Shown here: positions 18,405 to 51,514 of the stretch, piece after piece
Position numbering within the stretch: the stretch's first letter is position 1
Layout: each line of letters opens with the position of its first letter
Assembly (NCBI RefSeq): GCF_963506605.1
Contig: NC_083288.1
Span: 40,424,001 to 40,488,000 of the forward strand
Length of the DNA stretch: 64,000 nucleotides
Source of the DNA: Zootoca vivipara
Taxonomy: Eukaryota
Reading direction: 5' to 3'
The notes under the pieces: generated by a model
The model's database searches: none
What the model was told of the DNA's origin: nothing
What the model saw: only the letters and a program-made list of their open reading frames with translations
Translations under genes and position numbers: made by a program

Positions 18405-18422
18405 ATGCACCAGTCATTGCAA
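18405..18422 (+). CDS. Predicted upstream coding mini-exon of OR5V1-like copy 1 (MHQSLQ)
   Basis: AAT ATG CAC CAG TCA TTG CAA|GTGTGT within the block conserved upstream of all five paralogs; phase 0. Confidence 0.68.
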
Positions 18423-18507
18423 GTGTGTATTAGCAATTGGTTTAATGGGGGTAGTGTTATGACTAAGGTCAAGGATGAAGGAAGCTGGGAACACGTAATG
18501 TTTATAA

Positions 18508-18713
18508 GGGTTAATTACACTCATCTTTTGCCCCACTCTTTCCAGGTACAGGCCCACACTTAAAAGCTCTATGTCCTTTTTTGCCTCGAAGTTTTCCCGC
18601 GGAAATATGCTCTTTAGTACTCAATCAGAGCAAATGTCAATTCGGGTTCTCCACAGATTGCTGTTTGTTCCTACTGAGTTTTAGAGAGTGGCTTTTCACA
18701 GGCAAAGCTCTGG

Positions 18714-18762
<49 letters not shown>

Positions 18763-18838
18763 CGGTGCTTGGACATGGAGATTTAGAATGCAGACTGTGC
18801 TTGGAAAGAGAGGAGGAAAGGTAAGTGTAGATAAGCCC
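18508..18838. mobile_element. PIF/Harbinger-like MITE containing (CAA)n
   Basis: TAA/TTA flanks; right end ggtaagtgtagataagccc. Confidence 0.55.
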
Positions 18839-19149
18839 TTAGCTAGTACAGATAGAAGGAGCAAGGCGCCTCAACAGAAAGGATCTATGGAATGGGAGTG
18901 ATACATAGAATGTTCTGGAAAGGATGTTCAGGTGAATAGGAATATGTCTTAGATGAGCGTTCTCACAGAAAAATTCAAAAATCCACATTCGAGTAAAGAC
19001 TGTATTAGGCCCAACAAAATATTAGGAAATGGTGAGCAAATGTTTGAGTTCTCCAGAAGGCTTCAGCTGGCTAGGTGGCAAACACTCTTGCGGATTAGGA
19101 ATTGATTATGTTAGAAGGAAGCAGAGGAATAAAGGGAGACTTCTCCAAC

Positions 19150-19705
19150 TGAAGAGATTTAGAAAGTGGAGTCCCCCAAGGATCGGGAACCTGTGCTTTT
19201 AATCTTCTTCCTAAGTGATGAGGAGTCAGGTGGCCAGGTTAGTTGATGATACAAGATGTTCAGGGCCATTAAAACAAAGAGATTGCAAAGTCCTCCAAAA
19301 GGACCTCCTCAAACCGAGTGAACGTAAAATGGGAAATACAATTAAAAGCAAACAAGTGTAAAGTGATGCATGTTGGTGCAAAGAAGTATCTTGATTTCAC
19401 ATATTTGCACATGGGGGTCTGAACTGGCAATGGTCGACCAGGAACAACATCTCAGGGTTGTAAATGGATAGCTCAGTAAAGATGTCCACCCATTGTGCAG
19501 CAGTTGTGAGAAAGGTAAATCCCATGCTAGGGATCATTAGAAAAGAAACTGGAAATAAAAAATGCCAGTATAATAATGCAATTATACAAATGTATGGTAT
19601 GGCTGCCTTTGGAATACAGTACTGTGTACCGTTCTGGTTGCCTCACCTGAAAAAGGATGTTATAGAGTGGGAAAAGGTTCAGAATAGGGCCACCAAAATG
19701 ACCAT
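19150..19705 (+). mobile_element. CR1 LINE ORF2 fragment (old)
   Basis: SGVPQGS-like segment, KCKVMH, EKVQNRATKM. Confidence 0.8.
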
Positions 19706-19947
19706 GTCTTGAGTCTGGTGGACGTGCAATGGAGGGGATGGTGTGATGCAGAGGAAGAGTGGGAGCAGCTGGGGAGATGGGTTGAAGCTGAACTACCTGG
19801 GGGGAAGAGTCCCAGCAGGCTGCGGGAGGTGAAACTGGGCTGCTAAAAAGTATTAGAACCCGAGGAGGGAAGCAATGAGCTAGAGCTGGACCCAGGAGAG
19901 GGATGAAGTGGTCTGTCAAAATTGTTCTGCCCCTGTAATTTAGAATA

Positions 19948-20148
19948 CAGTGATTCCTCAACTTACGAATTTAATCCGTTCCGAAGGCACCTCCGTAGGT
20001 TGAAAAATTCGTAAGTCGAAAAATCCCTATCTAAAACCACTGCGGTTGCCTTTCAGATGTCGAGACATTCGTAAGGGTGCGGCCATTACCCCCGTTCGTA
20101 AGTCGAAAAATCCGGTTGTTGAGTCGTCCGTAAGTCGAGGTACCACTG
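19948..20148. mobile_element. Tigger-type MITE
   Basis: TA-flanked cagtgattcctcaacttacg / cgtaagtcgaggtaccactg. Confidence 0.82.
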
Positions 20149-20149
20149 T

Positions 20150-20930
20150 AGATATATCTAACCCTCGTTTTAAACTACCCAAGCTGTTGGCCATCACTAC
20201 ATCATGTGGGAGTGAATTATAGGGTTTAAATATGCACTGTGTGAAGAAGTCCTTTTTAATTTTTTTCCCCTTGACTCTACCAGCACTCAGCTTTATGGGA
20301 TGGATCCAGGTTTTAGTACTATGTAAGGGAGAGAAAAACCTCTCCAAACCCACTCTCTGAGCACCATGCATTATTGTGTACACCTCTATCATGTCCCCAC
20401 AGTACTTGACCTCCCCCCACCCCAACTAAGAAGTCCTAGTTGTAACCTTACTCCACATAGGAAACCGCTTACTAATTTTGGTTGCCCCTTTTCTGAACAT
20501 TTTCCATTTCTACAGTATCCTTCTTAGAATCATAGGATTATAGTGTTGAAAGGGACCTCAAGGGTCCAACCCCTTGCAATGGAGGGATCCTGTCCACAGT
20601 CAACCCTTGGTGGGCTCAATTGCGCCACCTTGAGGCTGAGGCCAGCTGACCAGATCCAAGTGTGAGGTCAACACAGGTTTCTATAATGGCATTATAATGG
20701 CAGGTTTATTCTTCCTAATCGGGTGTCTGTCTTTTCTTCAGCTGCTGCATGCTGAGTTAACATTTTCATTGAACTGTCCACTTAGGCCCCTAAGGCCCTG
20801 CTCCTTGATCAGGCCCTGCCAGTCCAAACCATGTCAGGATAAGTGTGAACATTGGATTGTTTGCCCCAAGGTACATCCATTCACATTTCCTTACACTGAA
20901 TTGTATTTGCCCATTTAACTTCTCACAAAC
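20150..20930 (-). mobile_element. CR1 LINE fragments (old)
   Basis: GDMIEVY, ERFFS and WNSLP-like remnants on the - strand. Confidence 0.7.
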
Positions 20931-21029
20931 CCAATTTGGAGAGCTCCTCTTAGAGCTCCTCTCAATCCCTACCATGTATGCAGCCTTCAACATGCCTATT
21001 GTGTCTCTTATGCTTTCAAACTCTTCCAG

Positions 21030-22031
21030 GAAAGCTCTTTTCTGAACGGAGAAATTGGGAACGGCACCCAAGTGACAGAATTCATCTTAATGGGGATTTC
21101 TAATCTCCCTGTGGTTCGCTTCTCCCTGTTTGCTGCCATTTTGCTCATCTACCTGATCACGCTGGTAGGAAATGGCACCATTCTTCTTGCCATAGCAATG
21201 AGCTCTCACCTGCACAGCCCCATGTATTTCTTCCTCAGCCACCTTTCCTTGCTGGACATCTGCTTCCCGACAGCTACGGTGCCCAAGATGCTGGAGAACT
21301 TCTTGTTAGAGATCAATACCATTTCCTTTGCTGGCTGTGTGCTACAACTCTACTTCCTGGTGGCACTGGTAGGGACAGAGGTCTACCTCTTGTCTGCCAT
21401 GGCCTATGACCGCTATGTGGCCATATGCAACCCTCTACGATACACAGTTATCATGAGCAAGAAGCTTTGTCTTCAGCTGGCAGCGGTTACCTGGGTCACA
21501 GGGTTCCTCAACTCCTTGCTCCACACAGTCATGACGTTCACTCTAACTTTCTGCAGATCCAACAGAGTCAATCAATACTACTGTGACATCGCGCCAGTGC
21601 AGGCATTATCGTGTGCTTCTACTTACGCAGCTGAAATGTTGGTCCTTACTGTTGGTGGATTTTTGGGTGTGGGGGCTTTCTTTGTGACACTGGTCTCTTA
21701 CATCTACATCATCTCCACCATCCTCAGGATCCGTTCTGCTGAGGGGAAGCGCAAGGCCTTCTCCACTTGCGCCTCCCATCTAATTGTCGTGCTCCTCTTC
21801 TATGGTACCATGATATTCACTTACATAAGGCCTCTCAACAGTCGCCATCCGGACCGGGACAGGATGGTGAGCATGCTCTCTGGGGTGGTTACCTCCATGG
21901 TGAATCCCTTGATCTACAGCCTTAGGAATAAGGAAGTCAAGGTGACCTTGAAGAGGGTGATAGTTCATATGTGCTCAAAGAGGGAAGGTGTGACAGGTGT
22001 GTTATCTGTACAGTATTTCTCCGTTAGATGA
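21030..22031 (+). CDS. OR5V1-like olfactory receptor copy 1, main exon (internal ATG replaced by ATT; about 339 aa with the upstream exon)
   Basis: Acceptor ttcCAG at 21027-21029; open frame ESSFLNGEIGNGTQVTEF...; all OR motifs intact. Confidence 0.88.
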   Translation, partial: ESSFLNGEIGNGTQVTEFILMGISNLPVVRFSLFAAILLIYLITLVGNGTILLAIAMSSHLHSPMYFFLSHLSLLDICFPTATVPKMLENFLLEINTISFAGCVLQLYFLVALVGTEVYLLSAMAYDRYVAICNPLRYTVIMSKKLCLQLAAVTWVTGFLNSLLHTVMTFTLTFCRSNRVNQYYCDIAPVQALSCASTYAAEMLVLTVGGFLGVGAFFVTLVSYIYIISTILRIRSAEGKRKAFSTCASHLIVVLLFYGTMIFTYIRPLNSRHPDRDRMVSMLSGVVTSMVNPLIYSLRNKEVKVTLKRVIVHMCSKREGVTGVLSVQYFSVR

Positions 22032-22283
22032 AAATGGACACATAAGTAATTCTGAGCCAATGAAATATAGTATACCCATTTTTTGAAAGGGGAAACAAAG
22101 GTAACATTTTGTCTCAGTTTTGTGGGATTTTATTGAATACATAAAATAAAAATACGTAACTAGCTCTGTTTCTATACCTTCTTTTAAAAAATACTCTTCA
22201 ACATATTTCCATTCTGCTGATGATGACATATTTCCACTAGCTAGAAATGGAGCTAGTGATTTGTTTTGATTAAGAAAACACAT

Positions 22284-22338
<55 letters not shown>

Positions 22339-22339
22339 G

Positions 22340-22575
22340 TAAAGCTCCTGCCCACCTAGCAGTTCGAAAGCACATCAAAGTGCAAGTAGATAAATAGGGA
22401 CCGCTCTGGCAGGAAGGTAAACGGCGTTTCTGTGCGCTGCTCTGGTTCGCCAGAAGCAGCTTTGTCATGATGGCCGAAGCAGTCTGCGGACAAACTCCGG
22501 CTCCCTCGGCCTATAGAGCGAGATGAGCACTGCAACCCCAGAGTTGGACACGACTGGACCTGATGGTCAGGTGCG
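22340..22575 (+). mobile_element. 5'-truncated Sauria SINE between two (TA)n tracts
   Basis: Matches the 3' two-thirds of the other Sauria copies. Confidence 0.85.
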
Positions 22576-22612
<37 letters not shown>

Positions 22613-23974
22613 ATGAAATAACTAAATAATAAGCCTAGGACTCTAAATCAATAAGAGGTAAAGCAAGTTATGTGATTATAGTAAGGGAAACGATACATTG
22701 GCGATTGGAAGTCAATTTTAAATTACAATGAATAGATTTTATGTTTACATGTTTATATTTTATAAATTTGTTTGGGGATATGTTATGTTTCGTTTAATTT
22801 GATATTGTTTACTATTTACTGTTTAAATGATTTAATTTGCCCAACAAGTTTCAATTATTTTTGGTTGAATTTGTTTATTAATTTATGTTTGTTAATTTAT
22901 GTTGGGTGGCTTAAGTGTGTATTTATGTTATTATAGTTATTCCCTTGTGTGTGTGTTTGTGTAATTTTCTAATTTTTTTGAATAAAGATTGAATTTTAAA
23001 TTAAAAATAAATAAATAAGAATACGTAAAAAAGAAAATGTAAAACTCTCTCCAGACATTTGGGATAAGTAACTTCTAATTGGTTGAACCAATTGGCGTGC
23101 TCTGGTCCATGGGGTCATGAAGAGTCGGACACAACTAAATGACTAAACAACAAAATTGGTTGAACATTTTGCTTGATGTAATATGGAGACTTCTTTTCTT
23201 GGTTCTCCTTGTGGCTCTGGTCGTTTCAGTTATAGGTTTATTTTTCCGTTTCACTTATAGATCCCCCCCCCCCGCAAGATAGATTGTTTTCTCTACAGGG
23301 GCTTTCCTTTCAAGTGTTGAAATTTGATGTGGCAGAGTCCACACACAGAGTAACCACTTCTGTGAGCAGAAAGTACTAGGGATGATGCGGAGAGGTGTTC
23401 TCGCTTGGCCCCATGTGTTCTCGGGACATCAAAGCCATGGACTTTGGACGAAACCATAATTATTTTTATACTTCTTCTGAGGACCTTTTCGGAGGGAGCT
23501 CTGTGGTAGCAGATGAGATGGAGACTGAACCATTACTGTGAACAAGGACCTGTGGGACTCACGAGGAAGGTGAAAACACTTGCATGGTCCCATTTTGGGA
23601 CGAGAGAAATGTGTATGTCCATCACCATATTTCAACTTCAATACCTACAGGGAGCACAATCTCCCTGTGGTTTAATAACTTCTATGGGCTTTGTCTTGGA
23701 GGTCACCAAGTACCATGAATTATAGACATTTTAATGGTAAGCCTTCCAACATGTAGGCCCAGCTCCACATGTGTGATTCCTCAATCTTGTTCTTAATGCT
23801 TGGACTCAGTGATGACTTATGTTGGGATACAATAAAGTTGTTTCTGAGCATATCCAAAGTGTCTCCTGTGATGAACCCCCTTGCCGACGTTGCCAATAGA
23901 TTATGAGACGAAAGGGTACAGGGGTAAAGCAATCCCCACTCAATTCCTTATGTCTCAAAATAAACCCCTCAATT

Positions 23975-24200
23975 CTTTGCCCAGTTCCAAAATGGCCACC
24001 GTGCCAGAAGTCGCACTGCAGCCATTTTGGAACTGGGCAGAACAGTATCAAAAGTCACTTCTGAGCATGCTCCGCCCAGTTCCAAAATGGCCACCGCGCC
24101 AGAATAAACCGGGAAGAAACAAAAAAAATCCGTTTTTTCAGCTAGGAGCAGCTGGAAAAACGGGGATTTCCCGGGGAAAACGGGAGACTTGGCAGCTATG
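23975..24200. mobile_element. Partial copy of the 1133-1470 hAT element (inverted)
   Basis: Ends gacttggcagctatg; shares the gcccagttccaaaatggc repeats. Confidence 0.8.
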
Positions 24201-25028: not shown

Positions 25029-25773
25029 CATCACCGTGCTAACAAAGGTCCGTATAGTTAAAGCTATAGTTTTCCCAGTAGTGATGTATGGAAGTGAGAG
25101 CTGGACCATAAAGAAGGCTGATCGCATGTTGTGAGAGCTGGACCATAAAGAAGGCTGGTGAGCATGTTGTATGGGGTGATAACCCCCATGTTGAACCCCT
25201 TGATCTACAGTCTCAGGAACAAGGAGGTTAAAGGGGCTTTGAGGAGGGTCATCGTTCATAAACGCCAATAAAGTTGGAAGGGGGGGGAGATATATGGCTA
25301 AGATACAATTATTCTATCCTATATCTTTGCCAACAAAGGTCCGCATAGTTAAAGCTATGGTTTTCCCAGTAGTGATGTATGGAGAGAGCTGGACCATAAA
25401 GAAGGCTGATCGCCGAAGAATTGATGCTTTTGAATTAAGGTGTTGGAGGAGACTCTTGAGAGTCCCATGGACTGCAAGAAGATCAAACTTACCCATTCTG
25501 AAGGAAATCAGCCCCGAGTGCTCACTGGAAGGACAGATCCTGAAGCTGAGGCTACAATACTTTGGCCACCTCATGAGAGAGAAGACTCTCTGGAAAAGAC
25601 CCTGATGTTGGGAGAAGGGGATGACAGAGGACGAGATGGCTGGACAGTGTTCTTGAAGCTACGAACATGAGTCTGACCAAACTGCGGGAGGCAGTGGAAG
25701 ACAGGAGTGCCTGGCATGCTCTGGTCCATGGGGTCACGAAGAGTCGGACATGACTAAACAACTAAACAACAAC
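25029..25773 (+). mobile_element. BovB/RTE 3' fragment, rearranged and containing an OR fragment
   Basis: TKVRIVKAMVFPVVMYG...LQYFGHLMR; (CAA) tail; TSD acatgctggta at 25018-25028 and 25772-25782. Confidence 0.85.
25152..25271 (+). pseudogene. OR5V1-like TM7/C-terminal fragment
   Basis: [39 protein letters not shown], near-identical to the paralogs' 3' ends. Confidence 0.92.
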
Positions 25774-26350
25774 ATGCTGGTATGTAAGATGCTATTTCAT
25801 CATCATCATCATTCCAAAGCAGTTTATAGCAATTGTATATACACACATTTTTTTTTAAAAAAAAGGATCACTAGCTATTATGGATAATGTTTTTCTTAAT
25901 TGCTTGCATAAGCCTGAGAGCAAAGAGAAGTTTTCAGGAAACATATAAAGTTTGGCCCATAGGGTCTATAAACAGGTGTCGCCATCTGGCAGTCCCTTTC
26001 TCCAATGCTGCTCAGATACTGTGGCCAATATATTCAGGATGGGTTGAGGCATGCTTTCTGCTACTTTTCTCTTTGTGTCTGATACTTGCTCTTGGGAGAA
26101 ATAAGCCAAACTCTGGGGGATTACCATCTAGAATGCAGATCATTAATGGTGCTAGGAAATCATGCATTGACATTGGCCAATTGGGATATATTTGCTGGCA
26201 TTGCTGAATAAGCTCTGCAGCCTGGTATTCCCTTGTGCTCCTTATGTTGAGATTTAAAGGAGGGTGTTGGGTTTGCCAGAGGAACAGACAATCCTTCCTT
26301 GATCTCAAGGCATAGGAGAGAGGAGTTCTTCACTGTGACTGTTTGGAAAA

Positions 26351-26374
26351 ATGGATGCACACCAGTCATTGCCA
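26351..26374 (+). CDS. Predicted upstream coding mini-exon of OR5V1-like copy 2 (MDAHQSLP)
   Basis: AAA ATG GAT GCA CAC CAG TCA TTG CCA|GTGAGT; phase 0. Confidence 0.72.
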
Positions 26375-28590: not shown

Positions 28591-29541
28591 GATACCTTAT
28601 CTCTGAGCAGAGATATGGAGAATGGCACCCTAGTGACAGAATTTATCCTCACCGGACTTTCTGATCTCCCAGCTGTCCGCTTCTCCCTCTTTGCTGCCTT
28701 TTTTCTCATCTACCTGGTCACCCTGGTGGGGAACGGCACCATTCTTCTTGCCATAGGAGCTGACTCTCACCTGCACAACCCCATGTATTTCTTCCTGACT
28801 AACCTTTCCCTGCTGGACATCTTCTGCCCCACAGCTACGGTGCCCAAGATGCTGGAGAACCTCTTGTCAGAGAGACATACCATTTCCTTTGTTGGCTGTG
28901 TGCTGCAGCTCTACTTCCTGGTAGCCTTGGCAGGGACGGAGGTCTTCCTCTTAGCTGTCATGGCTTATGACCGCTATGTGGCCATATGCAACCCTCTGCG
29001 ATACACGGTCGTCATGAGCAAGAAGCTTTGTCTTCAGATGGCTGCTGGTACATGGGTCACAGGGTTCCTCAACTCCTTGCTGCACACAGTGATGACCTTT
29101 ACTCTACCTTATTGCAAATTGAACAGGGTCAATCAATATTATTGTGACATCCCTCCAGTCTTGGCCTTATCATGTGCTTCTACTTATGCAGCTGAGATGG
29201 TTGTACTTATTTTTGGTGGCATCTTTGGTGTGGGGGCTTTTATGGTGACGCTGGTCTCCTACATCTACATCATCTCCACCATCCTTAGGATCCGTTCTGC
29301 CGAGGGGAAGCGCAAGGCATTTTCCACTTGTGCCTCCCATCTAATTGTGGTGTGCCTCTTTTATGGGACAACCATCTTCACTTATGCAAGGCCTACCTCC
29401 AGCCACCATCCAGATCAGGACAGGATGGTGAGCATGTTGTATGGGGTCATAACCCCAATGTTGAACCCCTTGATCTACAGCCTCAGGAACAAGGAGGTGA
29501 AAGGGGCCTTGGAAAGAGTAATTGCTCATAAACGCTATTGA
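28591..29541 (+). CDS. OR5V1-like olfactory receptor copy 2, main exon (internal ATG 28615)
   Basis: Acceptor cttgCAG; intact 7TM OR motifs; [13 protein letters not shown] and [23 protein letters not shown] resemble OR5V1. Confidence 0.93.
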   Translation, partial: DTLSLSRDMENGTLVTEFILTGLSDLPAVRFSLFAAFFLIYLVTLVGNGTILLAIGADSHLHNPMYFFLTNLSLLDIFCPTATVPKMLENLLSERHTISFVGCVLQLYFLVALAGTEVFLLAVMAYDRYVAICNPLRYTVVMSKKLCLQMAAGTWVTGFLNSLLHTVMTFTLPYCKLNRVNQYYCDIPPVLALSCASTYAAEMVVLIFGGIFGVGAFMVTLVSYIYIISTILRIRSAEGKRKAFSTCASHLIVVCLFYGTTIFTYARPTSSHHPDQDRMVSMLYGVITPMLNPLIYSLRNKEVKGALERVIAHKRY

Positions 29542-30399: not shown

Positions 30400-30612
30400 T
30401 AAGGTTAAGATTGCAGCCAGAAGTAGCTGCAACTAATTCTCATTTATTTCAATGGTAATTAAGTGCAGATAACATATACAATATCTCCTGATTCTTTTTG
30501 CACCTATCTTTTGTTTGTTTGTTATACCCCCTTGAAGTTAAATAAAACTTTAACTTACATCTAAATAGATCATTTAAAATTTTATATGTTAGGCTATCAT
30601 AAACAGTTCTTT

Positions 30613-30693
30613 GTTGTTGTTGTTGTTTAGTCGTTTAGTCGTGTCCGACTCTTCGTGACCCCATGGACCAGAGCACGGCAGGCACTCCTGTCT
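30613..30693 (-). mobile_element. BovB 3' terminal fragment
   Basis: Reverse complement of the BovB end at 45230-45300, with (CAA)n. Confidence 0.8.
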
Positions 30694-32232: not shown

Positions 32233-33653
32233 TATATAAACACTTTTCTAAATAAACAAAACAAACAATCCCCTGGTATTTGAGACCTAATTTGGGCCAA
32301 GTTATAAATCCACATCACTGGAAATTATCATTTTTTTATCACAGGTGGGAGAGCGAGCGAGCGTCCGAGTCCTATAGGGATGATTCCTGCCATTTCAGAT
32401 GGAAGACAAAACAGCTGTTCTCCCTTGGCATCTACTTTTCTATATGGAGGAAATTGTCTTCTATAGAGGAAAGTTCCTTCTAGAGTTGAAATCTGGCATG
32501 GTGGAGCTCCCCTCCCCAAGGTAACCACATGATTGATCAGGAAGCACTAGGGATGGTGCATAGCACCTTCCAAATTGGCCTTATGTGAGAGTCCTGGAGG
32601 CTTCAAATCCATACACTTCGGATGACATCATATTACTCTTGGTGACATTATTTTTACATCACCATGCATGCAGAGCATTTATCTTTCTGGAAGGAGCTCT
32701 GTGGTAGCAGATGAGATGGAGACTGCACCATAAATGTTAACAATGCTCTTTGGGACTCATTAAGGAGTAAGAAAGAATTGCATGGTCCCATTTTCGGAGG
32801 AGAGAAGTGTGTATGGCTATAGTTAAATTTCAATATCAATATTTGCAGGCACCACATTCTCCCTGTGGTTTTAGGATCACTATAGGGCTTGGGCTTCATC
32901 CTGGAGGTCACTGAGTACCATCAGTTATAGACATTTTTATGGACAGTCTTCAAACACATAGGGCCAGCTTGCTCGGTTTGAGTCTTCATGCTTGCTCTTA
33001 GTGCCTGGACTCAGCCGTGACTTATTCTGGGATGTGAGAAAGAAAGTGGCTCTGAGCATATACAAAGTGCCTAACCCTGTTGAATACTACCCCATTGAAT
33101 ACTGCTGCCACCCCCACATGACTAAGGGATTCTAGGCAGGAGGTTCAGAAACTGATCTCTCTACTCAGGCCCCACTTATTTTCTGTTTCATGGAATTTGT
33201 TCCTTCGCCATTGAAAGCTAAGGACACTTAAGCAAAGTCACAGTTCCTGCCTGGCTGCTATTTTCCTGAGTTTTGTGTAAAACCTGGAGAAGATCTGTTC
33301 CATCCTCTGGTGAAATGGAGCACATAAAACATGGGCTGGACTTCCTTAACATTCTAGGGAGTCATGTATTCAAAAAATCATAATAATGGAAATGTAGAGT
33401 TGGACAATTATTCACAGGACTGGAGCTTAAGGGTGCTGGAAAATCACCCATCACTTTGTCTTGACATTGGCAATGGTCATGGGAGGCAAACAGGTGCTTC
33501 CTGGCACTGCTGGTGTGCTCTGAGGCCTGCTATTCCCTTGAGCTCCTCATGTCGATACTTAAAAGAGAAGGCTGAGCTGTCGGAGGAACAGGCAATCCTT
33601 CCTTGATCTCAAGGCAGATGGAGAGGCATTCTTAAGAGTGACTGTTTGACGAA

Positions 33654-33677
33654 ATGGAAACGCACAAATCATTGACC
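33654..33677 (+). CDS. Predicted upstream coding mini-exon of OR5V1-like copy 3 (METHKSLT)
   Basis: GAA ATG GAA ACG CAC AAA TCA TTG ACC|GTGAGT; phase 0. Confidence 0.72.
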
Positions 33678-34928: not shown

Positions 34929-35897
34929 GAAAGTTCCTCTCACAGAGGAGAAATGGAGAACATCACCGTGGTGACAGAATTCATCCTAATGGGCCTTTCT
35001 GATCTCCCAGCTGTCCGCTTCTCCCTCTTTGCTGCCTTTTTGCTCATTTACCTGGTCACCCTGGTGGGGAATGGCACCATTCTTCTTGCCATAGGAGCTG
35101 ACTCCCACTTGCACAACCCCATGTATTTCTTCCTGACTAACCTTTCCCTGCTGGACATCTTCTGCCCCACAGCTACGGTACCCAAGATGCTGGAGAACCT
35201 CTTGTCAGAGAGAAATACCATTTCCTTTGTTGGTTGTGTGCTGCAGCTCTACTTCCTGGTAGCCTTGGCAGGGACAGAGGTCTTCCTCTTAGCTGCCATG
35301 GCTTATGACCGCTATGTGGCCATATGCAACCCTCTGCGATACACGGTCGTCATGAGCAAGAAGCTTTGTCTTCAGATGGCTGCTGGTACATGGCTCACAG
35401 GGTTCCTCAACTCCTTGCTGCACACAGTCATGACCTTTACTCTACCTTATTGCAAATTGAACAGGGTCAATCAATATTATTGTGACATCCCTCCAGTCTT
35501 GGCCTTATCATGTGCTTCCTCCTATGCAGCTGAGATGGTTGTACTCATTGTTGGTGGGATTTTTGGTGTGGGGGCTTTTCTGGTGACGCTGGTCTCCTAC
35601 ATCTACATCATCTCCACCATCCTTCGGATCCGTTCTTCCGAGGGGAAGCGCAAGGCCTTCTCCACTTGCGCCTCCCATCTTACGGTGGTGTGCCTCTTCT
35701 ATGGGACGACCATCTTCACTTACATAAGGCCTTCCTCCAGCCACCATCCAGATCAGGACAGGCTGGTGAGCATGTTGTATGGGGTGATAACCCCCATGTT
35801 GAACCCCTTGATCTACAGCCTCAGGAACAAGGAGGTTAAAGGGGCTTTGAGGAGGGTCATTGTTCATAGCCGGCTCGTTGGTCTAAGACAGGCATAG
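34929..35897 (+). CDS. OR5V1-like olfactory receptor copy 3, main exon (internal ATG 34953); C-terminus derived from an insertion
   Basis: Intact OR motifs; ends VIVHSRLVGLRQA* instead of VIVHKRQ*. Confidence 0.92.
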   Translation, partial: ESSSHRGEMENITVVTEFILMGLSDLPAVRFSLFAAFLLIYLVTLVGNGTILLAIGADSHLHNPMYFFLTNLSLLDIFCPTATVPKMLENLLSERNTISFVGCVLQLYFLVALAGTEVFLLAAMAYDRYVAICNPLRYTVVMSKKLCLQMAAGTWLTGFLNSLLHTVMTFTLPYCKLNRVNQYYCDIPPVLALSCASSYAAEMVVLIVGGIFGVGAFLVTLVSYIYIISTILRIRSSEGKRKAFSTCASHLTVVCLFYGTTIFTYIRPSSSHHPDQDRLVSMLYGVITPMLNPLIYSLRNKEVKGALRRVIVHSRLVGLRQA

Positions 35898-37110: not shown

Positions 37111-37114
37111 AGGG

Positions 37115-40762: not shown

Positions 40763-41953
40763 ACTTCCGGTTTCGCTCGTCGGGAGAATGGCTGACCTTT
40801 ACCATCTCTCCGACCCCCATGGGGGAATCTGGCGGCTGCTAGGGGAGTAAAGCAGCCTCCCCACCCTCCTGGGATGACGGGAGGGGCCGCAGGCCCGCAG
40901 ATGCCCCTTAACCCACCCCAATCTTTCGAGGGGTAGGGGCCCTGGGCCAAGCACCCATGGGGGCTGGAACTCTTGGAGGCCACCCTGTTCGAGCGCGATC
41001 TCCATAATTTAAGAGGAATAATTGGATTTAAATTTATGGACATGCTTCAAAAGACGGGGGAGAAGATACTGCCAGAAATTCCAGCTGCTGAGTGATAAGA
41101 GGGACTGAACAAAAAGGGAAGTGAATTTTTCTTTTTCTTTTTTCAAGATGTACTCACCACCTTCCTTTGACGGACGGTCCGTAGACTTTAGAACAAACGA
41201 GAAGTTAGGAAACAAACTGTGTGGATATTGGAGTTTATATAATAGAGGATTGTGATTTTGTATGTTTCTGGAAGTTATTTTGTTAAGTCTGTAAGAGCAA
41301 AGGCTCCCCAAGTGGATTCACGATCTCTGACACACTTTAAATTCGAACAAGATAAGAGCCGTGGAAGGAGGCAGAGGAGCAGTTAAAGGGCGGGGGAGCC
41401 ATAAATTTGTTATGAGAAGATCGTTAATATTTGTTTTGGGCTGATCTCCGTCTGGAAAAACTGTGACCCTGCAAATGGTGGATTTATGGAGCAGAAGCCG
41501 GAATACAACATTTGAGATCTGCAAGATGGCGCCTGCTCCTGTTTGAATGTCGGAGCAGCTGGGGAAACATTCCAGTTTGCAAAATAAGGATTTATGGGGA
41601 GGCTGGACTGGTCTGGACAAAAAATCCACACAGGAAAAGTGTCTTTGTGTTTAATCTTGTTTGATATTTATCTCAGAAGCTGTGATAAAGAGGAAGATTA
41701 AAACAAGAAAGAACTGTTGGAAAAGATCGGGAATATAATGGACTATAATGATAAGATTTTGAAATTTGGACTAGGATGGCAGCAGGTACCGTTATCCAGA
41801 ATCCCCAGAATTTGAAGCATGGGAAGTCAATTTTTTTAATGATTTGGCATAATATTTGGTTTAATTAATATGCATTTGTATAATTTGGAATAATTGATAT
41901 GATATAATTGGTTTGTAATTGAAAAATTTAATAAAAACTGTTTTCATAAAAAA
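40763..41953 (+). mobile_element. About 1.2-kb non-autonomous L1-type retroelement inserted in an OR promoter block
   Basis: TSD gacattggtcat(gggagg) at 40745-40762 and 41954-41971; GC-rich 5' head acttccgg...aatggc; AATAAA plus A-rich tail; absent from unit A. Confidence 0.75.
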
Positions 41954-42139
41954 GACATTGGTCATGGGAGGGAAACAGGTGCTTCCTGGCACTGCTGGTG
42001 TGCTCTGGGGCCTGCTATTCCCTTGAGCTCCTCACGTCGAGACTTAAAAGAGAAGGTTGAAGCTGTCGGAGGAACAGGCAATCCTTCCTTGATCTCAAGG
42101 CAGATGGAGAGGCATTCTTAAGAGTGACTGTTTGATGAA

Positions 42140-42163
42140 ATGGAAACGCACAAATCATTGACC
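42140..42163 (+). CDS. Predicted upstream mini-exon of OR5V1-like copy 4 (METHKSLT)
   Basis: Coding part identical to 33654-33677; GTGAGT donor at 42164. Confidence 0.6.
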
Positions 42164-43495: not shown

Positions 43496-43850
43496 TACAT
43501 GTAATGCACAAAGAGGTTCTGACGGGTCTCAGCAATTTAAGGACCTAAAAATGACTTTGTCAGATGATCTGATCTAAGAACCATCTAATTAAGCATTGTG
43601 TTTTCTCACACAGGCCAAACATTGGTCTCTGTGAAATTCAGGTACAGGGTATGAATGTGATCACTAGGAAGTCATCTTTGCTTCTCAGAGTTATAAAGTG
43701 TCTGGGCAGGGACCTTCTATTCCTGCTTAGTATGACTAAAGGCTAAATGCCTAACACCTTGAAAGCAAAGAATGCCTTAACTTGTGTATGCCTGTAGCCT
43801 CCAACATGTTTATTATCTCACATTTTTGCTTTCAAATACTTGCAGGAAAG

Positions 43851-44777
43851 ATGGAGAACATCACCGTGGGGACAGAATTCATCTTAATTGGCCTTTCTGA
43901 TCTCCCAGCTGTCCGCTTCTCCCTCTTTGCTGCCTTTTCGCTCATCTACCTGGTCACCCTGGTGGGGAACGGCACCATTCTTCTTGCCATAGGAGCTGAC
44001 TCTCACCTGCACAACCCCATGTATTTCTTCCTGACTAACCTTTCCCTGCTGGACATCTTCTGCCCCACAGCTACAGTGCCCAAGATGCTGGAGAACCTCT
44101 TGTCAGAGAAAAATACCATTTCCTTTGTTGGCTGTGTGCTGCAGCTCTACTTCCTGGTAGCCTTGGCAGGGACGGAGGTCTTCCTCTTAGCTGCCATGGC
44201 TTATGACCGCTATGTGGCCATATGCAACCCTCTGCGATACACGGTCATCATGAGCAAGAAGCTGTGTCTTCAGATGGCTGCTGGTACATGGGTCACAGGG
44301 TTCCTCAACTCCTTGCTGCACACAGTCATGACTTTCACTCTACCTTATTGTAAATCTAATAGAGTCAATCAATACTACTGTGACATCCCTCCAGTCTTGG
44401 CCTTATCATGTGCTTCCACCTATGCAGCTGAGATGGTTGTCTTCATTGTTGGTGGGATTTTGGGTGTGGGGGCTTTTCTGGTGACATCAGTCTCCTACAT
44501 CCACATCATCTCCACCATCCTTCGGATCCGTTCTTCTGAAGGGAAACGCAAGGCCTTCTCCACTTGCGCCTCCCATCTTACGGTGGTGTGCCTCTTCTAT
44601 GGGACAATCTTCTTCACTTACTTAAGGCCTTCCTCCAGCCACCATTCAGATCAGGACAGGCTGGTGAGCATGTTGTATGGGGTGATAACCCCCATGTTGA
44701 ACCCCTTGATCTACAGTCTCAGGAACAAGGAGGTTAAAGGGGCTTTGATGAGGGTCATCGTTCATAAATGCCAATAA
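43851..44777 (+). CDS. OR5V1-like olfactory receptor copy 4 (308 aa from ATG 43851)
   Basis: Intact OR motifs; leader shortened by 19 nt relative to paralogs. Confidence 0.92.
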   Translation: MENITVGTEFILIGLSDLPAVRFSLFAAFSLIYLVTLVGNGTILLAIGADSHLHNPMYFFLTNLSLLDIFCPTATVPKMLENLLSEKNTISFVGCVLQLYFLVALAGTEVFLLAAMAYDRYVAICNPLRYTVIMSKKLCLQMAAGTWVTGFLNSLLHTVMTFTLPYCKSNRVNQYYCDIPPVLALSCASTYAAEMVVFIVGGILGVGAFLVTSVSYIHIISTILRIRSSEGKRKAFSTCASHLTVVCLFYGTIFFTYLRPSSSHHSDQDRLVSMLYGVITPMLNPLIYSLRNKEVKGALMRVIVHKCQ

Positions 44778-44828
44778 AGTTGGAAGGGGGTGAGATATAT
44801 GGCTAAGATACAATTATCCTATCCTATA

Positions 44829-45300: not shown

Positions 45301-45322
45301 ATGCTGGTATGTAAGATGCTAT

Positions 45323-45368
<46 letters not shown>

Positions 45369-47028
45369 CAAAGCAGTTTATAGCAATTGTATACACACAA
45401 TTTTTTTAAAAAAGGATTACTAGCTATTATGGAAAATGTTTTTCTTAATTGCTTCCATAAGCCTGAGAGCAAAGAGACGTTTTCAGGAAACATATACAGG
45501 TAAATATGGAAGACACTTGCTAGAAGCTTTCCCTTTCAATGGACAAGAGGTGGTGTTGGTCATGTTTTTTCTTTTAAGGTGATTGATGTAACATGCAGTT
45601 TGGCCCATAGGGTCTATAAACAGGTGTCGCCATCTGGCAGTCCCTTTCTCCAATGCTGCTCAGATACTGTGGCCAATATATTCAGGATGGGTTGAGGCAT
45701 GCTTTCTGCTACTTTTCTCTTTGTGTCTGATACTTGCTCTTGGGAGAAATAAATGACTAAACAACTAAACAACAACAACAATATCATTATCTACTAAACT
45801 AACCCAATCTCTGAAAAAGAAGAACAGAATTTAATCTGTTTTAAATTATGAGTGATCAACTGACAATGACCTGCTTTGAAGTTGTCACCTGACATGAGTT
45901 TGCTCCATCTTCTATGTTGTCAGTGCTTTAGATATTTGAAGATAGATATCCTCTCCGTCTCCTATGTTTAGCCTATCTTCAGCCAGAGAAGACTGAGGAG
46001 ACATGACAGCTATCTTTAATTATCTAAAGGGCTGTCACATGGAAGATGCAGGAAGATTGATTCCTCCTGCTCCAGATGGTAGGACTGAAACAAATGGATT
46101 CAAATTACAAGACAGGACTGTCAAACTAATTGTCAAGAAGATCTTCCTGATGGTAAGAGCTGTTCAACAGTGGAGGGGGGTGGACCCTCCTTCACTGGAG
46201 TGTTTAAAGGAGAGGCTGAAGGGACGACAGAGGATGAGATGGTTGGACAATATTCTCGAAGCTACTAACATGAGTTTGACCAAACTGCAGGAGGCAGTGG
46301 AAGACAGGAGCGCCTGGCGTGCTATGGTCCATGGGGTCACAAAAGTCAGACATGACTAAACGACTAAACAACAACAGGGTGACAAATTGCCATGGATGCT
46401 TTGAGATTCCTGAATTACAGGAGAGGGTGTTGAATTAGATGACCCTCAGGCTACCGTCCAACTCTGCTGTATCCAAGCATGATATCACAGTTTGAGTTTC
46501 AGATGAAGTCCAGGAAAATCCACTTTCAAAGCCCCACTCACCCAATCACACAATTCAACTTACCTCACAGGATTATTGTGGGGGTAAAGTGTGTCTGTGT
46601 GGTTTTGTGTAAATTGCCTTAAGATTGAAGGGTGCCATAAAAATGAAGTAAATAAATCATAGAAACATGAAATCATATATGTAATCTTAATTCTTCACAC
46701 TGAAATGTTAGCGGAATGACAAACATAAATAGATGCCACTATTAATTATCTGTTTGGACTTTTGTTCTAACATGTTGAGATGTGTTGTGTAATCCAGTTT
46801 CACTTTCAATAAAATCTGCCACACCACTGTTTTTTTTTATATATAGTTGTGTTTCTTACTTCTGATCTGTGAACATGAACGTCTCTTCAACTTTCCCCTC
46901 TTCATTTATCACTTTTCAACTTCTAGCGGGGAAAACCCACTCCATTTCCAACCCCAGAAAATGCGAGTTGCACACAAGTTTTCTGATGTAAATTACTATA
47001 GTTTTTAATCACTTCCCCACTCCAGTGT

Positions 47029-47606
47029 GGGACGCGGGTGGCACTGTGGTCTAAACCACAGAGCCTAGGGCTTGCCAATCAGAAGGTCGGCGGTTCGAAT
47101 CCCTGCGATGGGTTGAGTTCCTGCTGCTTGGTCCCTGCTCCTGCCAACCTAGAAGTTCTAACGGACGTCAAAGTGCAAGTAGATAAATAGGTACCACTCC
47201 GGCGGGAAGGTAAATGGCATTTCTGTGCGCTGCTCTGGTTCACCAGAAGTGGCTTAGTCATGCTGGCCGCATGACCCGGAAGCTGTACGCCGGCTCCCTC
47301 GGCCAGTAAAGTGAGATGAGCGCCGCGACCCCAGAGTCGTTCACAACTGGACCTAATGGTCAGGGCGGAGTTTCATGCAATGCTAGTGGCGGAGTTTCAT
47401 GCTCCGGCACCAGGGGCGGGCGTGCCTCCTGGAGGGCCTGGGCACGTGTTCCAGGGCCGTGGCGTGCCTCCGGGGGGCATGGCACGCCTCCCGGAGGGGC
47501 GTGGCACACGTTCCCAGGGTGGGCGCCCGCAATGGCGCCCCTTGGAGCCCGCCGCTTGGGGCGGCCCACCCCCACTGCCCCTATCTTCCTATGCCCCTGC
47601 CTTTTA
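47029..47606 (+). mobile_element. Sauria SINE with a GC-rich hAT-like insertion (about 47361-47599) in its tail
   Basis: 12-bp TSD ccactccagtgt at 47017-47028 and 47607-47618. Confidence 0.85.
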
Positions 47607-47618
47607 CCACTCCAGTGT

Positions 47619-47808
47619 ATAGAATCATGGAATTATAGGGTTGGAAGGTGCCCCGAGGGTCATCTAGTCCAACCCCCTTCAATACAGAAATCTCAGCTAA
47701 AGCATCCACCATGACAGATGGCCACCCAACATCTGCTTGAAAACCTCCAAGGAACGAGAGTTCACAACCTCCCGTGGGCGACCGCTCCGTGGTTGAACTC
47801 TCTTACTA
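47619..47808 (-). mobile_element. CR1 3' end
   Basis: Reverse complement ends ggttggactagatgacc...ccttccaac...gattctat. Confidence 0.75.
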
Positions 47809-48836
47809 TTTCCGTTCCACTCACAGAAAAAGTGTGACCTGCTCTGGCACTGTAGCATTCGCAAGATTACAAATGATCCACAGTGAATAGATAAGGAGGA
47901 AACTTTACTTAGCAGCGTTGCTACCAAACTATATGCAAAACTGAAACAAACCAGATCTTCTTAGCTCCCGTTCCCTGCTGGCGTCACTCAGAACTGATCC
48001 ACTCACCCACCCCATTTTTAAAACATTTTAAATACTGCTCACATTGCAAGTATCTTGGAATGGAAGTCACCTTGGAGGTTGGTGACAAGATCACAGTAAC
48101 AAAAATGGCCACCGTGGTCTCGCGATAACTAACAGGAAGATGGTGTCTGGGAAGATGGTATCCTGGATTTTGTCTTCAAGGTGTTGGAGGGTATGCATGA
48201 GGTATGAGCAAAGCCCACCAAAAAGGACCTACCCTGTTTCCCCGAAAATAAGACATACCCATAAAATAAGCCGTAGCAAGATTTCTAAGCAGTTGTGCAA
48301 TATAAGCCATACCCCGAAAATAAGACATAGTGATAGGCGCAGTTCTGGAGGGCACCAAGGAAGAGGCGAGGCTGGACGCATAATAAAATTAAGACATCCC
48401 CTGAAAATAAGCCATGGTGTGTCTTCTTGAGGAAAAATAAATATAAGACAGTGTCTTATTTTCGGGAAAACACGGTCGTCCCTAAAGCTTCTGAGCTTTG
48501 TGTAAACACTGGACTAAAACAGTTCCTTACTCTGGTGAGCTGGAGTACATAAAACATTGACCTGATTTCCTTAACCTCTAGGGAGTGATATCTTGAATTA
48601 TTCACAGCACTGTAGTTTATTGTGGTGGCAAATCACCCATCACTCTTGGTCTTGACATTGGCCATAGGTGGTGAGCAGAGATGTTTCCTGACATTGCTTA
48701 GGAGCTTTGAGGCCTTCTATTCCCTTGAGCTGCTGTTGAGGTTGAAAGGAGCGTTTTGAGCTGCCGGAGGAACAGACAATCCTTCCTTGATCTCAAGGCA
48801 GATGAGAGGCATTCTTAAGAGTGACTGTTTGGAGAA

Positions 48837-48860
48837 ATGGAAACACGCCAGTCATTGACA
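48837..48860 (+). CDS. Predicted upstream coding mini-exon of OR5V1-like copy 5 (METRQSLT)
   Basis: GAA ATG GAA ACA CGC CAG TCA TTG ACA|GTGAGT; phase 0. Confidence 0.72.
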
Positions 48861-49900
48861 GTGAGTATTATTAGATACTAGCTTAATGGGGCTATCCTTG
48901 TGACAAAGATCAAGGCTTAGGGAAAACGGGAAGAGTGATGTTTCTATTGAAGTTCGAAGAAATGAGACTCATAAACTGAAGCAAGTGTACATGGAATGAG
49001 AGTGGTACATTGAATGTTCTAGAAGCAGTGCTCTTTTCTAGGGGTACTCAAGGGTACTGGGTACTGGGGCCTTCCTCCCCCCTCCCAATGTTGAAAGTGT
49101 GGCATTTACAGTAACAACTTCATAGTGAGTACTGGCACATTTCTTCCTTAAAATGAAAGGAGCGCTATCTAGAAGGGATGCTCAGATGAACAGAAAAATG
49201 GTTTAGATGAGAGTGGTATAAAAACATTTGTAAATCCATATGAGGGCAATATTTTATCAAGACAACCACAATGTAATGAGCTTTTCAGAGCTTTTAATCA
49301 GGCTGAATAGAAAACAAAGGGAGGGAAGGGGAGGATGAATAAAGCCGGCTGAGGGTGAAGCCACAAAGTCTTCATCTAGTGAGAGGCACCAGATAGAATG
49401 AGGGAGGACATTCACATGAACTGACAGATGTGGACAGGATTTTCTGAGACAATATTACTGCATGCAGATTGGTCCTCCTGCAGTAAAAAGAAGGCACAAA
49501 TTTGCTCAGCTAGGGATTTTGTCCCCTCTCACTTTTCTTGATCACCCCCTTGCCATTCCCCTTGCTTCCCCTTCCCACCCCATGGAAATCTGCTTACCCT
49601 GATAGGTGGAGTGGCATTGTGGCAGCGTCCATGAGACCCTCAGTTAGTTAACAACCCTCCATCAAGCCCCGTAGCTACAGTACTGTACACGTGTTCCAGC
49701 TTCCACACTGGGTGCTCACCATTGACAATATCACCACTTACCGTACATGTAATGTACAAAGAAGCTCTGACGAGTCTCAGCAATTTAAGGACCCAAAAAT
49801 GACTTTGTCAGATGATCTGATCTAAGAACCATCTAATTAAGCATTGTGTTTCTCACACGGGCCCAACATTGGTCTCTGAGAAATTCAGCTACAGGGTATG

Positions 49901-50373
49901 TGTCCAAGTACATGTCCAGGTACGTCCAGGTACGTGTCCAGAGGAGGGCAACCAAATGGTCAAAGGCCTGGAAACGATGCCTTATGAGGAACGGCTTAGG
50001 GAGCTGGGTATGTTTAGCCTGGAGAAGAGAAGGTTAAGGGGTGATATGATAGCCATGTTCAAATATATGAAAGGATGTCATATAGAGGAGGGAGAAAGGT
50101 TGTTTTCTGGTGCTCCAGAGAAGTGGACACGGAGCAATGGATTCAAACTACAAGAAAGAAGATTCCACCTAAACATTAGGAAGAACTCCCTGACAGTAAG
50201 AGCTGTTTGGCAGTGGAATTTGCTACCAAGGAGTGTGGTGGAATCGTCTCCTTTGGAGGTGTTTAAGCAGAGGCTTGACAGGCATATGTCAAGAATGCTT
50301 TGGTGGTGTTTCCTGCTTGGCAGGGGGTTGGACTGGATGGCCCTTGTGGTCTCTTCCAACTCTATGATTCTAT
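49901..50373 (+). mobile_element. Young 5'-truncated CR1 LINE in an OR intron
   Basis: YEERLRELGMFSLEKRRLRGDMI...WNLLP; tctatgattctat tail; TSD gtatg; absent in the paralogous introns. Confidence 0.92.
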
Positions 50374-50563
50374 GTATGAATGTGATCGCTAGGAACTAAT
50401 ATTTGTTTCTCAGAATTCTAAAGCAGGGACCTTCTATTCCTGCTTAGCATGACTAAAGGCTATATGCCTAACACCTTGAAAAGCAAAGAATGCCTTAACT
50501 TGTGTATGCCTGTAGCCTCCAACATGCTTACTATCTCACACTTTTGCTTTCAAATGCTTGCAG

Positions 50564-51514
50564 GAAAGTTCCTCTCACAGAGGAGAAATGGAGAACATCA
50601 CCGTGGTGACAGAATTTATCCTAATGGGCCTTTCTGATCTCCCAGCTGTCCGCTTCTCCCTCTTTGCTGCCTTTTTGCTCATCTACCTGGTCACCCTGGT
50701 GGGGAATGGCACCATTCTCCTTGCCATAGGAGCTGACTCTCACCTGCACAACCCCATGTATTTCTTCCTGACTAACCTTTCCCTGCTGGACATCTTCTGC
50801 CCCACAGCTACGGTGCCCAAGATGCTGGAGAACCTCTTGTCGGAGAGACATACCATTTCCTTTGTTGGCTGTGTGCTGCAGCTCTACTTCCTGGTAGCCT
50901 TGGCAGGGACAGAGGTCTTCCTCTTAGCTGCCATGGCTTATGACCGCTATGTGGCCATATGCAACCCTCTGCGATACACGGTCATCATGAGCAAGAAGCT
51001 GTGTCTTCAGATGGCTGCTGGTACATGGGTCACAGGGTTCCTCCACTCCTTGCTGCACACAGTCATGACCTTTACTCTACCTTATTGTAAATCTAATAGA
51101 GTCAATCAATATTATTGTGACATCCCTCCAGTCTTGGCCTTATCATGTGCTTCCACCTATGCAGCTGAGATGGCTGTCTTCATTGTTGGTGGGATTTTGG
51201 GTGTGGGGGCTTTTCTGGTGACGCTGGTCTCCTACATCCACATCATCTCCACCATCCTTCGGATCCGTTCTTCTGAAGGGAAACGCAAGGCCTTCTCCAC
51301 TTGCGCCTCCCATCTTACGGTGGTGTGCCTCTTCTATGGGACAATCCTCTTCACTTACTTAAGGCCTTCCTCCAGCCACCATTCAGATCAGGACAGGCTG
51401 GTGAGCATGTTGTATGGGGTGATAACCCCCATGTTGAACCCCTTGATCTACAGTCTCAGGAACAAGGAGGTTAAAGGGGCTTTGATGAGGGTCATCGTTC
51501 CTAAACACCACTAA
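50564..51514 (+). CDS. OR5V1-like olfactory receptor copy 5, main exon (internal ATG 50588)
   Basis: Acceptor cttgCAG; intact OR motifs. Confidence 0.93.
   Translation, partial: ESSSHRGEMENITVVTEFILMGLSDLPAVRFSLFAAFLLIYLVTLVGNGTILLAIGADSHLHNPMYFFLTNLSLLDIFCPTATVPKMLENLLSERHTISFVGCVLQLYFLVALAGTEVFLLAAMAYDRYVAICNPLRYTVIMSKKLCLQMAAGTWVTGFLHSLLHTVMTFTLPYCKSNRVNQYYCDIPPVLALSCASTYAAEMAVFIVGGILGVGAFLVTLVSYIHIISTILRIRSSEGKRKAFSTCASHLTVVCLFYGTILFTYLRPSSSHHSDQDRLVSMLYGVITPMLNPLIYSLRNKEVKGALMRVIVPKHH

What the first reader, a model, noticed from the sequence alone, without database searches (positions are those of the whole stretch)
18405..51514. A family of split-CDS olfactory receptors: conserved upstream ATG mini-exon spliced in frame to each OR5V1-like gene
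Seen in sequence: 1.2-2.6 kb upstream of each of the five full-length paralogs, a conserved block ends in ATG plus whole codons plus a GT donor. These are 18405-18422 MHQSLQ|GTGTGT, 26351-26374 MDAHQSLP|GTGAGT, 33654-33677 and 42140-42163 METHKSLT|GTGAGT, and 48837-48860 METRQSLT|GTGAGT. All are phase 0 with a purine at -3. Four main exons have a CAG acceptor exactly 24 stop-free nt before the conventional start position (exons begin at 21030, 28591, 34929, 50564). Copy 1 has a shorter exon with a differently placed ATG yet keeps the phase. Established knowledge: vertebrate OR coding regions are classically intronless, and split-CDS ORs are a reported minority. Inference: these receptors carry a 14-16 aa N-terminal extension that single-ORF annotation misses, which could affect trafficking or allow two start sites.
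Basis: partly seen in the sequence, partly recalled or inferred. Interest (0 to 1): 0.85.

Follow-up and report, generated by a model that had tools for sequence, protein, structure and literature searches.

The report
Lizard smell-receptor genes with upstream start exon
Five neighbouring lizard smell-receptor genes each have a short upstream first exon with its own start codon, readable in frame with the receptor in four of them, as already known for a minority of mouse and human receptors and already modelled in other lizards and snakes.

Summary
The sequence observation is exact.

Each mini-exon ends a roughly 200-base conserved island, while the intron beyond it is barely alignable between old paralogs. 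The donor GTGAGTAT is identical in copies 2-5.

Public gene models from at least eight other squamate families carry the homologous extension (M-D/E-x-x-Q-S-L-x | E-S-S-x-L...). Most of them lack the inner Met, as copy 1 does here (ATT).

Three corrections:
- Copy 4 has a 19-base deletion after its acceptor, so its upstream ATG opens an out-of-frame 21-codon uORF.
- For copy 1, the public model of this species (Zootoca vivipara) uses a different first coding exon (18788-18820).
- No RNA evidence was obtained.

This is the known kind of "split OR gene" (Barnes et al. 2020). OR5V1 is not on their mammalian list, and I found no paper describing split ORs in squamates. I did not send any joined (spliced) protein to a search tool.

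The parts
18180..18404 (+). Copy 1 conserved upstream island (promoter-like block plus likely 5' UTR)
   Evidence: Aligns with the islands of copies 2-5. Holds TATTCCCTTGTG and the invariant 19-mer.
18405..18422 (+). Copy 1 mini-exon coding part MHQSLQ, donor CAA|gtgtgt. Its ATG is not positionally homologous to the ATG of the other copies.
   Evidence: It is the only phase-0 open ATG in the island.
18788..18820 (+). Rival first coding exon of copy 1 used by the public Zootoca model (MQTVLGKRGGK, donor AAG|gtaagt). It lies in a local repeat.
21030..22031 (+). Copy 1 main exon. ATT replaces the usual ATG, and the reading frame is open from the acceptor.
   Evidence: 100% identical to P0044.
26120..26350 (+). 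Copy 2 upstream island
26351..26374 (+). Copy 2 mini-exon coding part MDAHQSLP, donor gtgagtat
28591..29541 (+). Copy 2 main exon (24 open bases, then ATG)
33420..33653 (+). Copy 3 upstream island
33654..33677 (+). Copy 3 mini-exon coding part METHKSLT, donor gtgagtat
34929..35897 (+). Copy 3 main exon (24 open bases, then ATG).
41900..42139 (+). Copy 4 upstream island
42140..42163 (+). Copy 4 mini-exon, identical to that of copy 3. Here it opens an out-of-frame uORF.
43846..44777 (+). Copy 4 main exon. A 19-base deletion leaves 5 bases before the ATG at 43851. The ORF from that ATG is intact (308 aa).
48600..48836 (+). Copy 5 upstream island
48837..48860 (+). Copy 5 mini-exon coding part METRQSLT, donor gtgagtat
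50564..51514 (+). Copy 5 main exon (24 open bases, then ATG)

Best explanation
These are five tandem OR5V1-like olfactory receptor genes of Zootoca vivipara with the usual two-exon layout of OR genes:
- a proximal promoter;
- a short first exon (inferred, about 90 bases);
- a 1.25-2.6 kb intron;
- the main exon.

The special feature is that the first exon carries an ATG in good context, placed in phase 0 before the donor. The main exon is open for 24 bases from its acceptor. A scanning ribosome would therefore start in exon 1 and make a receptor with 14-16 extra N-terminal residues.

This arrangement is old in squamates. The inner ATG is a second, dispensable start that has been lost in copy 1 and in many other lineages, making the coding region obligately split there.

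- Copies 2, 3 and 5 can use both starts.
- Copy 4 has lost the frame through a 19-base deletion. It must rely on leaky scanning, or on the AG five bases further on, or it is decaying.

Shown: the sequence anatomy, the paralog conservation, and the homologous extensions in other species' models. Inferred: the splicing itself, the transcription start, and use of the upstream ATG.
For: - The anatomy is exact.
- Conservation profile among old paralogs: the block -80..-1 is 81-95% identical; donor +1..+8 is 8/8 in copies 2-5 and 7/8 with copy 1; the intron beyond is about 50-70% identical with many gaps.
- Homology resumes about 50 bases before each acceptor.
- Extension-bearing public models: Podarcis lilfordi MQTHQSLT|ESSSHRGEMENIT; Elgaria MEKCQSLP|ESFSLSNNVGNGT; Tiliqua MATLQSFQ|ERSSLRREIENST; Hemicordylus MDIHQSLP|ESSSLSIEIENST; snakes MDKQQLLTG|ECSSLSKGTENRT and relatives.
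- In those models the stretch between the junction and the inner-Met position is always 8 residues. The only length change is one whole codon, in snakes.
- Inner Met is absent (I, V, T or P) in most of them. On the tree its state changes at least 11 times.
- The copy 1 clade (Zootoca, Lacerta agilis, two Podarcis; support 100) keeps I at that place with intact receptors. Copy 1 is 96% identical to its L. agilis ortholog, compared with 97% for copy 2 and its ortholog.
- Upstream ATG context is G/A at -3, and G at +4 in copies 2-5.
Against:
- Orthologous DNA could not be fetched, so cross-species support rests on gene models. Those models are selected for open frames and may seed each other.
- The peptide-coding 24 bases are less conserved (65-83%) than the adjacent non-coding block.
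- Copy 4 tolerates a frame break with an otherwise intact ORF.
- A further upstream ATG lies 35 bases (25 in copy 1) before the mini-exon ATG in copies 1, 3, 4 and 5. If transcribed, it adds a small uORF.
- For copy 1 the public model uses another exon.
Confidence: 0.65

Rival explanations
1. Exon 1 is spliced as proposed but is functionally a non-coding leader. The in-frame ATG is an inherited accident, of the kind seen in roughly a fifth of mammalian ORs. Most protein in copies 2-5 starts at the inner ATG, and the extension has no role.
For: - Barnes et al. report in-frame upstream ATGs in 13.6% of human and 21.5% of mouse ORs.
- The mini-exon coding bases are less conserved than the neighbouring 5' block.
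- Copy 4 keeps an intact ORF despite the frame break.
- The public annotation of this species starts copies 2-5 at the inner Met.
Against: - The inner Met has been lost in copy 1 and its orthologs, and in Elgaria, Tiliqua, Hemicordylus and many snakes, all with intact receptors.
- The extension has constant length, and its only indel is a whole codon.
- The upstream ATG has a strong context.
Confidence: 0.2
2. For copy 1 only: the true first coding exon is 18788-18820 (MQTVLGKRGGK), as in the public Zootoca model, not 18405-18422.
For: - Perfect donor AAG|gtaagt.
- The same peptide, with three substitutions, appears in the Podarcis raffonei and P. muralis models of the copy 1 ortholog.
- The copy 1 donor at 18422 is weaker (CAA|gtgtgt).
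Against: - The exon lies in a roughly 70-base element present three times locally (14208, 16034, 18818), directly after a (CAA)n run.
- It is absent from the introns of copies 2-5.
- No good acceptor or promoter island precedes it.
- The Lacerta agilis model of the same ortholog, and the three models of the sister Podarcis clade, all use different first exons. That looks like model guessing.
Confidence: 0.25
3. The mini-exons are not exons at all. The island is only a promoter or enhancer, and the ATG...GT arrangement is a chance feature copied by gene duplication.
For: - Chance candidates are common, at 2-7 per 3 kb.
- The five copies are not independent.
Against: - The donor octamer is perfectly conserved, while the flanking intron decays.
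- Homologous peptides begin independent gene models in eight other squamate families.
- Genes without an inner Met stay intact.
Confidence: 0.05

Closest known systems
Split OR genes of mouse and human (Barnes et al. 2020, BMC Genomics 21:196, PMC7055050)
   Same: - A first coding exon of a few residues (1-13 aa in most listed genes) holds the start codon.
- The intron, of about 0.5-8 kb in nearly all listed genes (up to 22.6 kb), lies in the extracellular N-terminus.
- Both classes occur here. Class 1 has no inner ATG, so the gene looks like a pseudogene unless exon 1 is counted (copy 1). Class 2 has both starts available (copies 2, 3, 5).
- Split genes occur as small clusters of paralogs.
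   Different: - OR5V1 and its mouse orthologs are not in their list.
- This case is in squamates and seems to span most of the order.
- Their genes have RNA-seq junction support, which is lacking here.
ORs with an in-frame upstream ATG in the 5' UTR (same paper, Table 1 text)
   Same: Copies 2, 3 and 5 keep the inner ATG, so formally they are ORs with an in-frame upstream ATG in a leader exon.
   Different: Here the upstream ATG and its phase are kept across paralogs and squamate families, and they outlive the inner ATG.
Multi-exon OR genes of cichlid fishes (Azzouzi et al. 2014, PMC4122780)
   Same: They are another vertebrate exception to the single-coding-exon rule (title and abstract only).
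   Different: A different OR group and lineage. I did not read the paper's details.

Membership tests
Vertebrate odorant receptor (Pfam 7tm_4, PF13853) | 7tm_4 domain and OR signature motifs ([25 protein letters not shown], PxLNPxIYSLRN) | tested here: met
   Precomputed Pfam PF13853 and PF00001 on the window's own proteins P0001 and P0007. The motifs are visible in all five translations.
OR5V1-like subfamily | Closest named relatives are OR5V1 or OR5V1-like | tested here: met
   The top hits are OR5V1-like proteins: squamates at 81-97% identity and mammals at 70-76%. Orthology by synteny was not tested.
Split OR gene sensu Barnes et al. 2020 | Transcript evidence for the exon-exon junction | not testable with these tools
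No listed holder run is on record as RNA.
Split OR gene sensu Barnes et al. 2020 | Start Met and splice junction conserved in orthologs or closest paralogs | tested here: met
   The ATG and donor are present in all five paralogs, and the frame is kept in four. Homologous extensions appear in models of eight other squamate families. The orthologs were compared at protein-model level only, not as DNA.
Split OR gene sensu Barnes et al. 2020 | Intact full-length ORF (about 300-345 aa) only or also when two exons are read together | tested here: met
   Read exon by exon, the total is 339 aa for copy 1, 324 for copies 2 and 5, and 330 for copy 3. This is not met for copy 4, where the phase-0 reading stops after 13 codons.
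Split OR gene sensu Barnes et al. 2020 | Intron in the extracellular N-terminus or TM1 | tested here: met
   The junction comes after residue 8 (residue 6 in copy 1), upstream of the N-glycosylation site NxT.

The most novel reading that the evidence does not exclude
An OR5V1-like lineage has had a split coding region since before the divergence of skinks, cordylids, lacertids, anguids and snakes. From my own knowledge of published timetrees, that is on the order of 150-200 million years. Translation starts in exon 1, and the inner ATG is a dispensable back-up that has been lost repeatedly. This would be the first documented conserved split-CDS OR family outside mammals and teleosts. Its short, length-constant N-terminal peptide (M-D/E-x-x-Q-S-L-x-E-S-S-x-L) would have a role of its own, for instance in receptor export.
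Probability: 0.45. Interest if true: 0.45.

Novelty: new member of a known kind. Interest (0 to 1): 0.38.

Why it matters
OR repertoires of non-mammals are still mined as single-exon ORFs (for example Policarpo et al. 2024). Genes like copy 1 and its relatives, which have no ATG in the main exon, risk being counted as pseudogenes or given arbitrary first exons. The five different first exons in public lacertid models of the same gene type show this.

A conserved two-exon coding structure in squamates would:
- correct those counts;
- give the right N-termini for expression studies;
- show that the 'split OR' class found in mouse and human is older and wider than mammals.

It does not change how ORs are understood to work.

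Tried and rejected
- **RNA reads.** The later cluster look-up did include P0004, a public Zootoca protein about 98% identical to copy 3.
- **Metagenome scan.** The invariant 19-mer gave 18 loci, all chance matches of 19-29 bases with no island or OR nearby.
- **N-terminal search.** A third protein search limited to the N-terminal 40 residues of P0003 found only the two Podarcis lilfordi proteins.
- **Earlier notes.** A word search of the scan's earlier notes found nothing.
- **Sixth island.** The sixth match of TATTCCCTTGTG at 22938 is an isolated 12-mer in AT-rich sequence.
- **Second island upstream of copy 1.** Nothing was found in 15281-18179.
- **Joined protein.** I did not search or fold a joined (spliced) protein. 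The only joined reading was an in-script count of codons before the first stop.
Full report
**What is in the window.** The plus strand carries five full-length OR5V1-like olfactory receptor genes in tandem. Their main exons end at 22031, 29541, 35897, 44777 and 51514. A truncated sixth copy and two ORs of other subfamilies are also present.

The window is Zootoca vivipara. The main exon of copy 1 is 100% identical to XP_034992676.1 of that species (P0044).

**The observation.**
- Copies 2-5 have ATG plus seven codons and then GTGAGTAT.
- Copy 1 has ATG plus five codons and then GTGTGTAT.
- Four main exons begin with cag|G exactly 24 stop-free bases before the usual start position.
- In copy 1 that position reads ATT. 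The next in-frame ATG lies after the N-glycosylation site, at the edge of TM1.

Its main exon starts at 43846 and has only GAAAG before its ATG at 43851, a 19-base deletion relative to copies 3 and 5. The phase-0 reading from the mini-exon stops after 13 codons. In copy 4 the upstream ATG therefore opens a 21-codon uORF that overlaps the receptor's start. Use of the AG at 43849-43850 as the acceptor would restore the frame, but a cag five bases upstream should normally win. That last point is inference.

**Is it more than chance?** A single 'ATG, open codons, GT' arrangement is not. Each 3 kb upstream region holds 2-7 such phase-0 candidates with a donor matching at least 7 of 9 consensus positions.

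The five mini-exons are different because they are homologous and end a conserved island.
- Between copy 1 and the other copies (83% identical in the main exon), the only alignable upstream sequence is this island of 70-200 bases, plus one weak block. Homology then resumes about 50 bases before the acceptor.
- Within the island, the 80 bases before the ATG are 81-95% identical between old paralogs.
- The eight bases after the donor are identical in copies 2-5 and 7/8 with copy 1.
- The next 60 intron bases fall to about 50-70% identity with many gaps.
- The 19-mer CTTCCTTGATCTCAAGGCA occurs exactly five times, once per island.
- TATTCCCTTGWG occurs once per island, plus one stray copy.

This is the pattern expected of a promoter plus first exon with a used donor. 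Reading the TCCCTTG motif as an O/E-like site and TTAAAG as TATA-like is my inference only.

The 24 coding bases are the least conserved part of the exon, at 65-83%. They have no indels among copies 2-5. So the frame is constrained more clearly than the peptide sequence.

**Copy 1.** Its ATG is not the ATG of the other copies. The alignment shows a 16-base gap that removes the ancestral ATG region, and a different ATG two codons further on, again in phase 0. Together with the loss of the inner ATG, this is what one expects if an upstream start is required.

On a tree of the receptor cores (N-termini and copy 3 left out), copy 1 groups with one gene each from Lacerta agilis, Podarcis raffonei and P. 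muralis (support 100). All four have I at the inner-Met place and intact receptors. Copy 1 is 96% identical to its L. agilis ortholog, much as copy 2 is to its own ortholog at 97%. A gene without any usable start would not be expected to stay this intact.

**Other squamates.** Public protein models were available instead.

| Species or group | N-terminus of the model | Inner Met position |
|---|---|---|
| Podarcis lilfordi (an ENA annotation) | MQTHQSLT\|ESSSHRGEMENIT | M |
| Elgaria | MEKCQSLP\|ESFSLSNNVGNGT | V |
| Tiliqua | MATLQSFQ\|ERSSLRREIENST | I |
| Hemicordylus | MDIHQSLP\|ESSSLSIEIENST | I |
| Candoia, Liasis, Protobothrops, Crotalus, Thamnophis | MDKQQLLTG\|ECSSLSKGTENRT and close variants | T or P |

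These first exons are plainly homologous to the window's METHKSLT, METRQSLT and MDAHQSLP. The stretch between the junction and the inner-Met place is always eight residues. The only length change is one whole codon, in snakes.

On the tree the inner-Met state changes at least 11 times. Some of those changes are annotation choices.

Caveat: gene models are chosen to have open frames and can seed each other across species. Even so, chance would not give homologous peptides of constant length.

**The rival exon of copy 1.** The public Zootoca model starts copy 1 with MQTVLGKRGGK, encoded at 18788-18820 with a perfect donor. Two Podarcis models have the same peptide with three substitutions.

That exon lies in a roughly 70-base element found three times within 5 kb, at 14208, 16034 and 18818 against 0 expected. 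It sits directly after a (CAA)n run, and it has no counterpart in the introns of copies 2-5. The L. agilis model of the same ortholog, and the three models of a sister Podarcis clade with the same ESSFLNGEIGNGT start, all use yet other first exons. I read this as model guessing. Only RNA can settle it.

**RNA.** One search found no holder run on record as RNA. It did find three deep raw RNA runs of the same species, of unknown tissue. There is therefore no transcript evidence in this report.

**How it most likely works.** Transcription starts in the island, perhaps 60-70 bases before the mini-exon ATG. Exon 1 is spliced at the conserved donor to the cag acceptor. The ribosome meets the exon 1 ATG first, with G or A at -3, and G at +4 in copies 2-5. 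It then makes a receptor with 16 extra hydrophilic residues (14 in copy 1) ahead of the NxT site.

A further ATG lies 35 bases upstream of the mini-exon ATG (25 in copy 1) in copies 1, 3, 4 and 5. Its context is weak, and it gives a 5-codon uORF in copies 3 and 4 or an overlapping uORF in copies 1 and 5. If transcribed, it would dampen translation. All steps in this section are inferred.

**Comparison with what is known.** This is the 'split OR gene' of Barnes et al. 2020 (PMC7055050).
- They list 41 mouse and 13 human genes, mostly with first coding exons of 1-13 residues and introns of 0.55-22.6 kb.
- They describe two classes: no inner ATG, or both starts available.
- The genes occur as small paralog clusters.
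- OR5V1 is not on their list.

The same paper notes in-frame upstream ATGs in 13.6% of human and 21.5% of mouse ORs. Copies 2, 3 and 5 also fit that plainer description. A paper search found no account of split ORs in squamates. A recent vertebrate-wide survey mines ORs as single-exon genes.

**Verdict.** The feature is real and conserved. It is a new member of a known kind, and it is already implicit in several public gene models. It is of moderate interest for annotation and for the age of split ORs. I did not send any joined spliced protein to a search or fold tool; all searches were made exon by exon or with public proteins.

Noticed in passing
14208-14229, 16034-16055, 18818-18839 (+): There are three copies of a roughly 70-base element ending in a consensus splice donor (AAG|GTRAGTGTRGRTAAGCCCT; 0 expected by chance). 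The copies at 14208 and 18818 directly follow a low-complexity run (a T run and (CAA)n). The third copy supplies the first coding exon of the public Zootoca model of copy 1. It could be a transposon fragment or a duplicated leader exon; this is not resolved.
   Followed up: partly
14300-15280 (+): The neighbouring OR (the Python 'OR10AG1-like' protein P0183 has a very similar N-terminus; ATG at 14333) also has a ctacag acceptor-like site exactly 24 stop-free, in-frame bases before its ATG. The mammalian OR10AG1/Olfr1123 is on Barnes et al.'s list of split ORs. The third OR (ATG at 56753) has a cctag site 15 in-frame open bases before its ATG. I did not look for an upstream start exon for either gene.
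   Followed up: no
58175-58807 (+) and 25152-25295 (+): There is a truncated sixth OR5V1-like copy, with only the last 210 codons (annotated publicly as a 192-aa protein, P0161). There is also a 109-144-base fragment of an OR 3' end, 96-98% identical to the ends of copies 3-5, lying about 1 kb upstream of the copy 2 island. Both look like relics of the tandem duplications.
   Followed up: partly
33942, 42428, 30371, 36441, 55478 (+): A repeated element carries ATGGTCAGGGGTCCCTTTACC, an ATG followed by a GT. Two copies lie inside the introns of copies 3 and 4. An older public Zootoca isoform (P0163, MVRA|NITVV...) may take its start from such an element.
   Followed up: no
17152-17859 (+); 60711-64000 (-): A reverse-transcriptase-like ORF fragment lies just upstream of the copy 1 island.
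   Followed up: no
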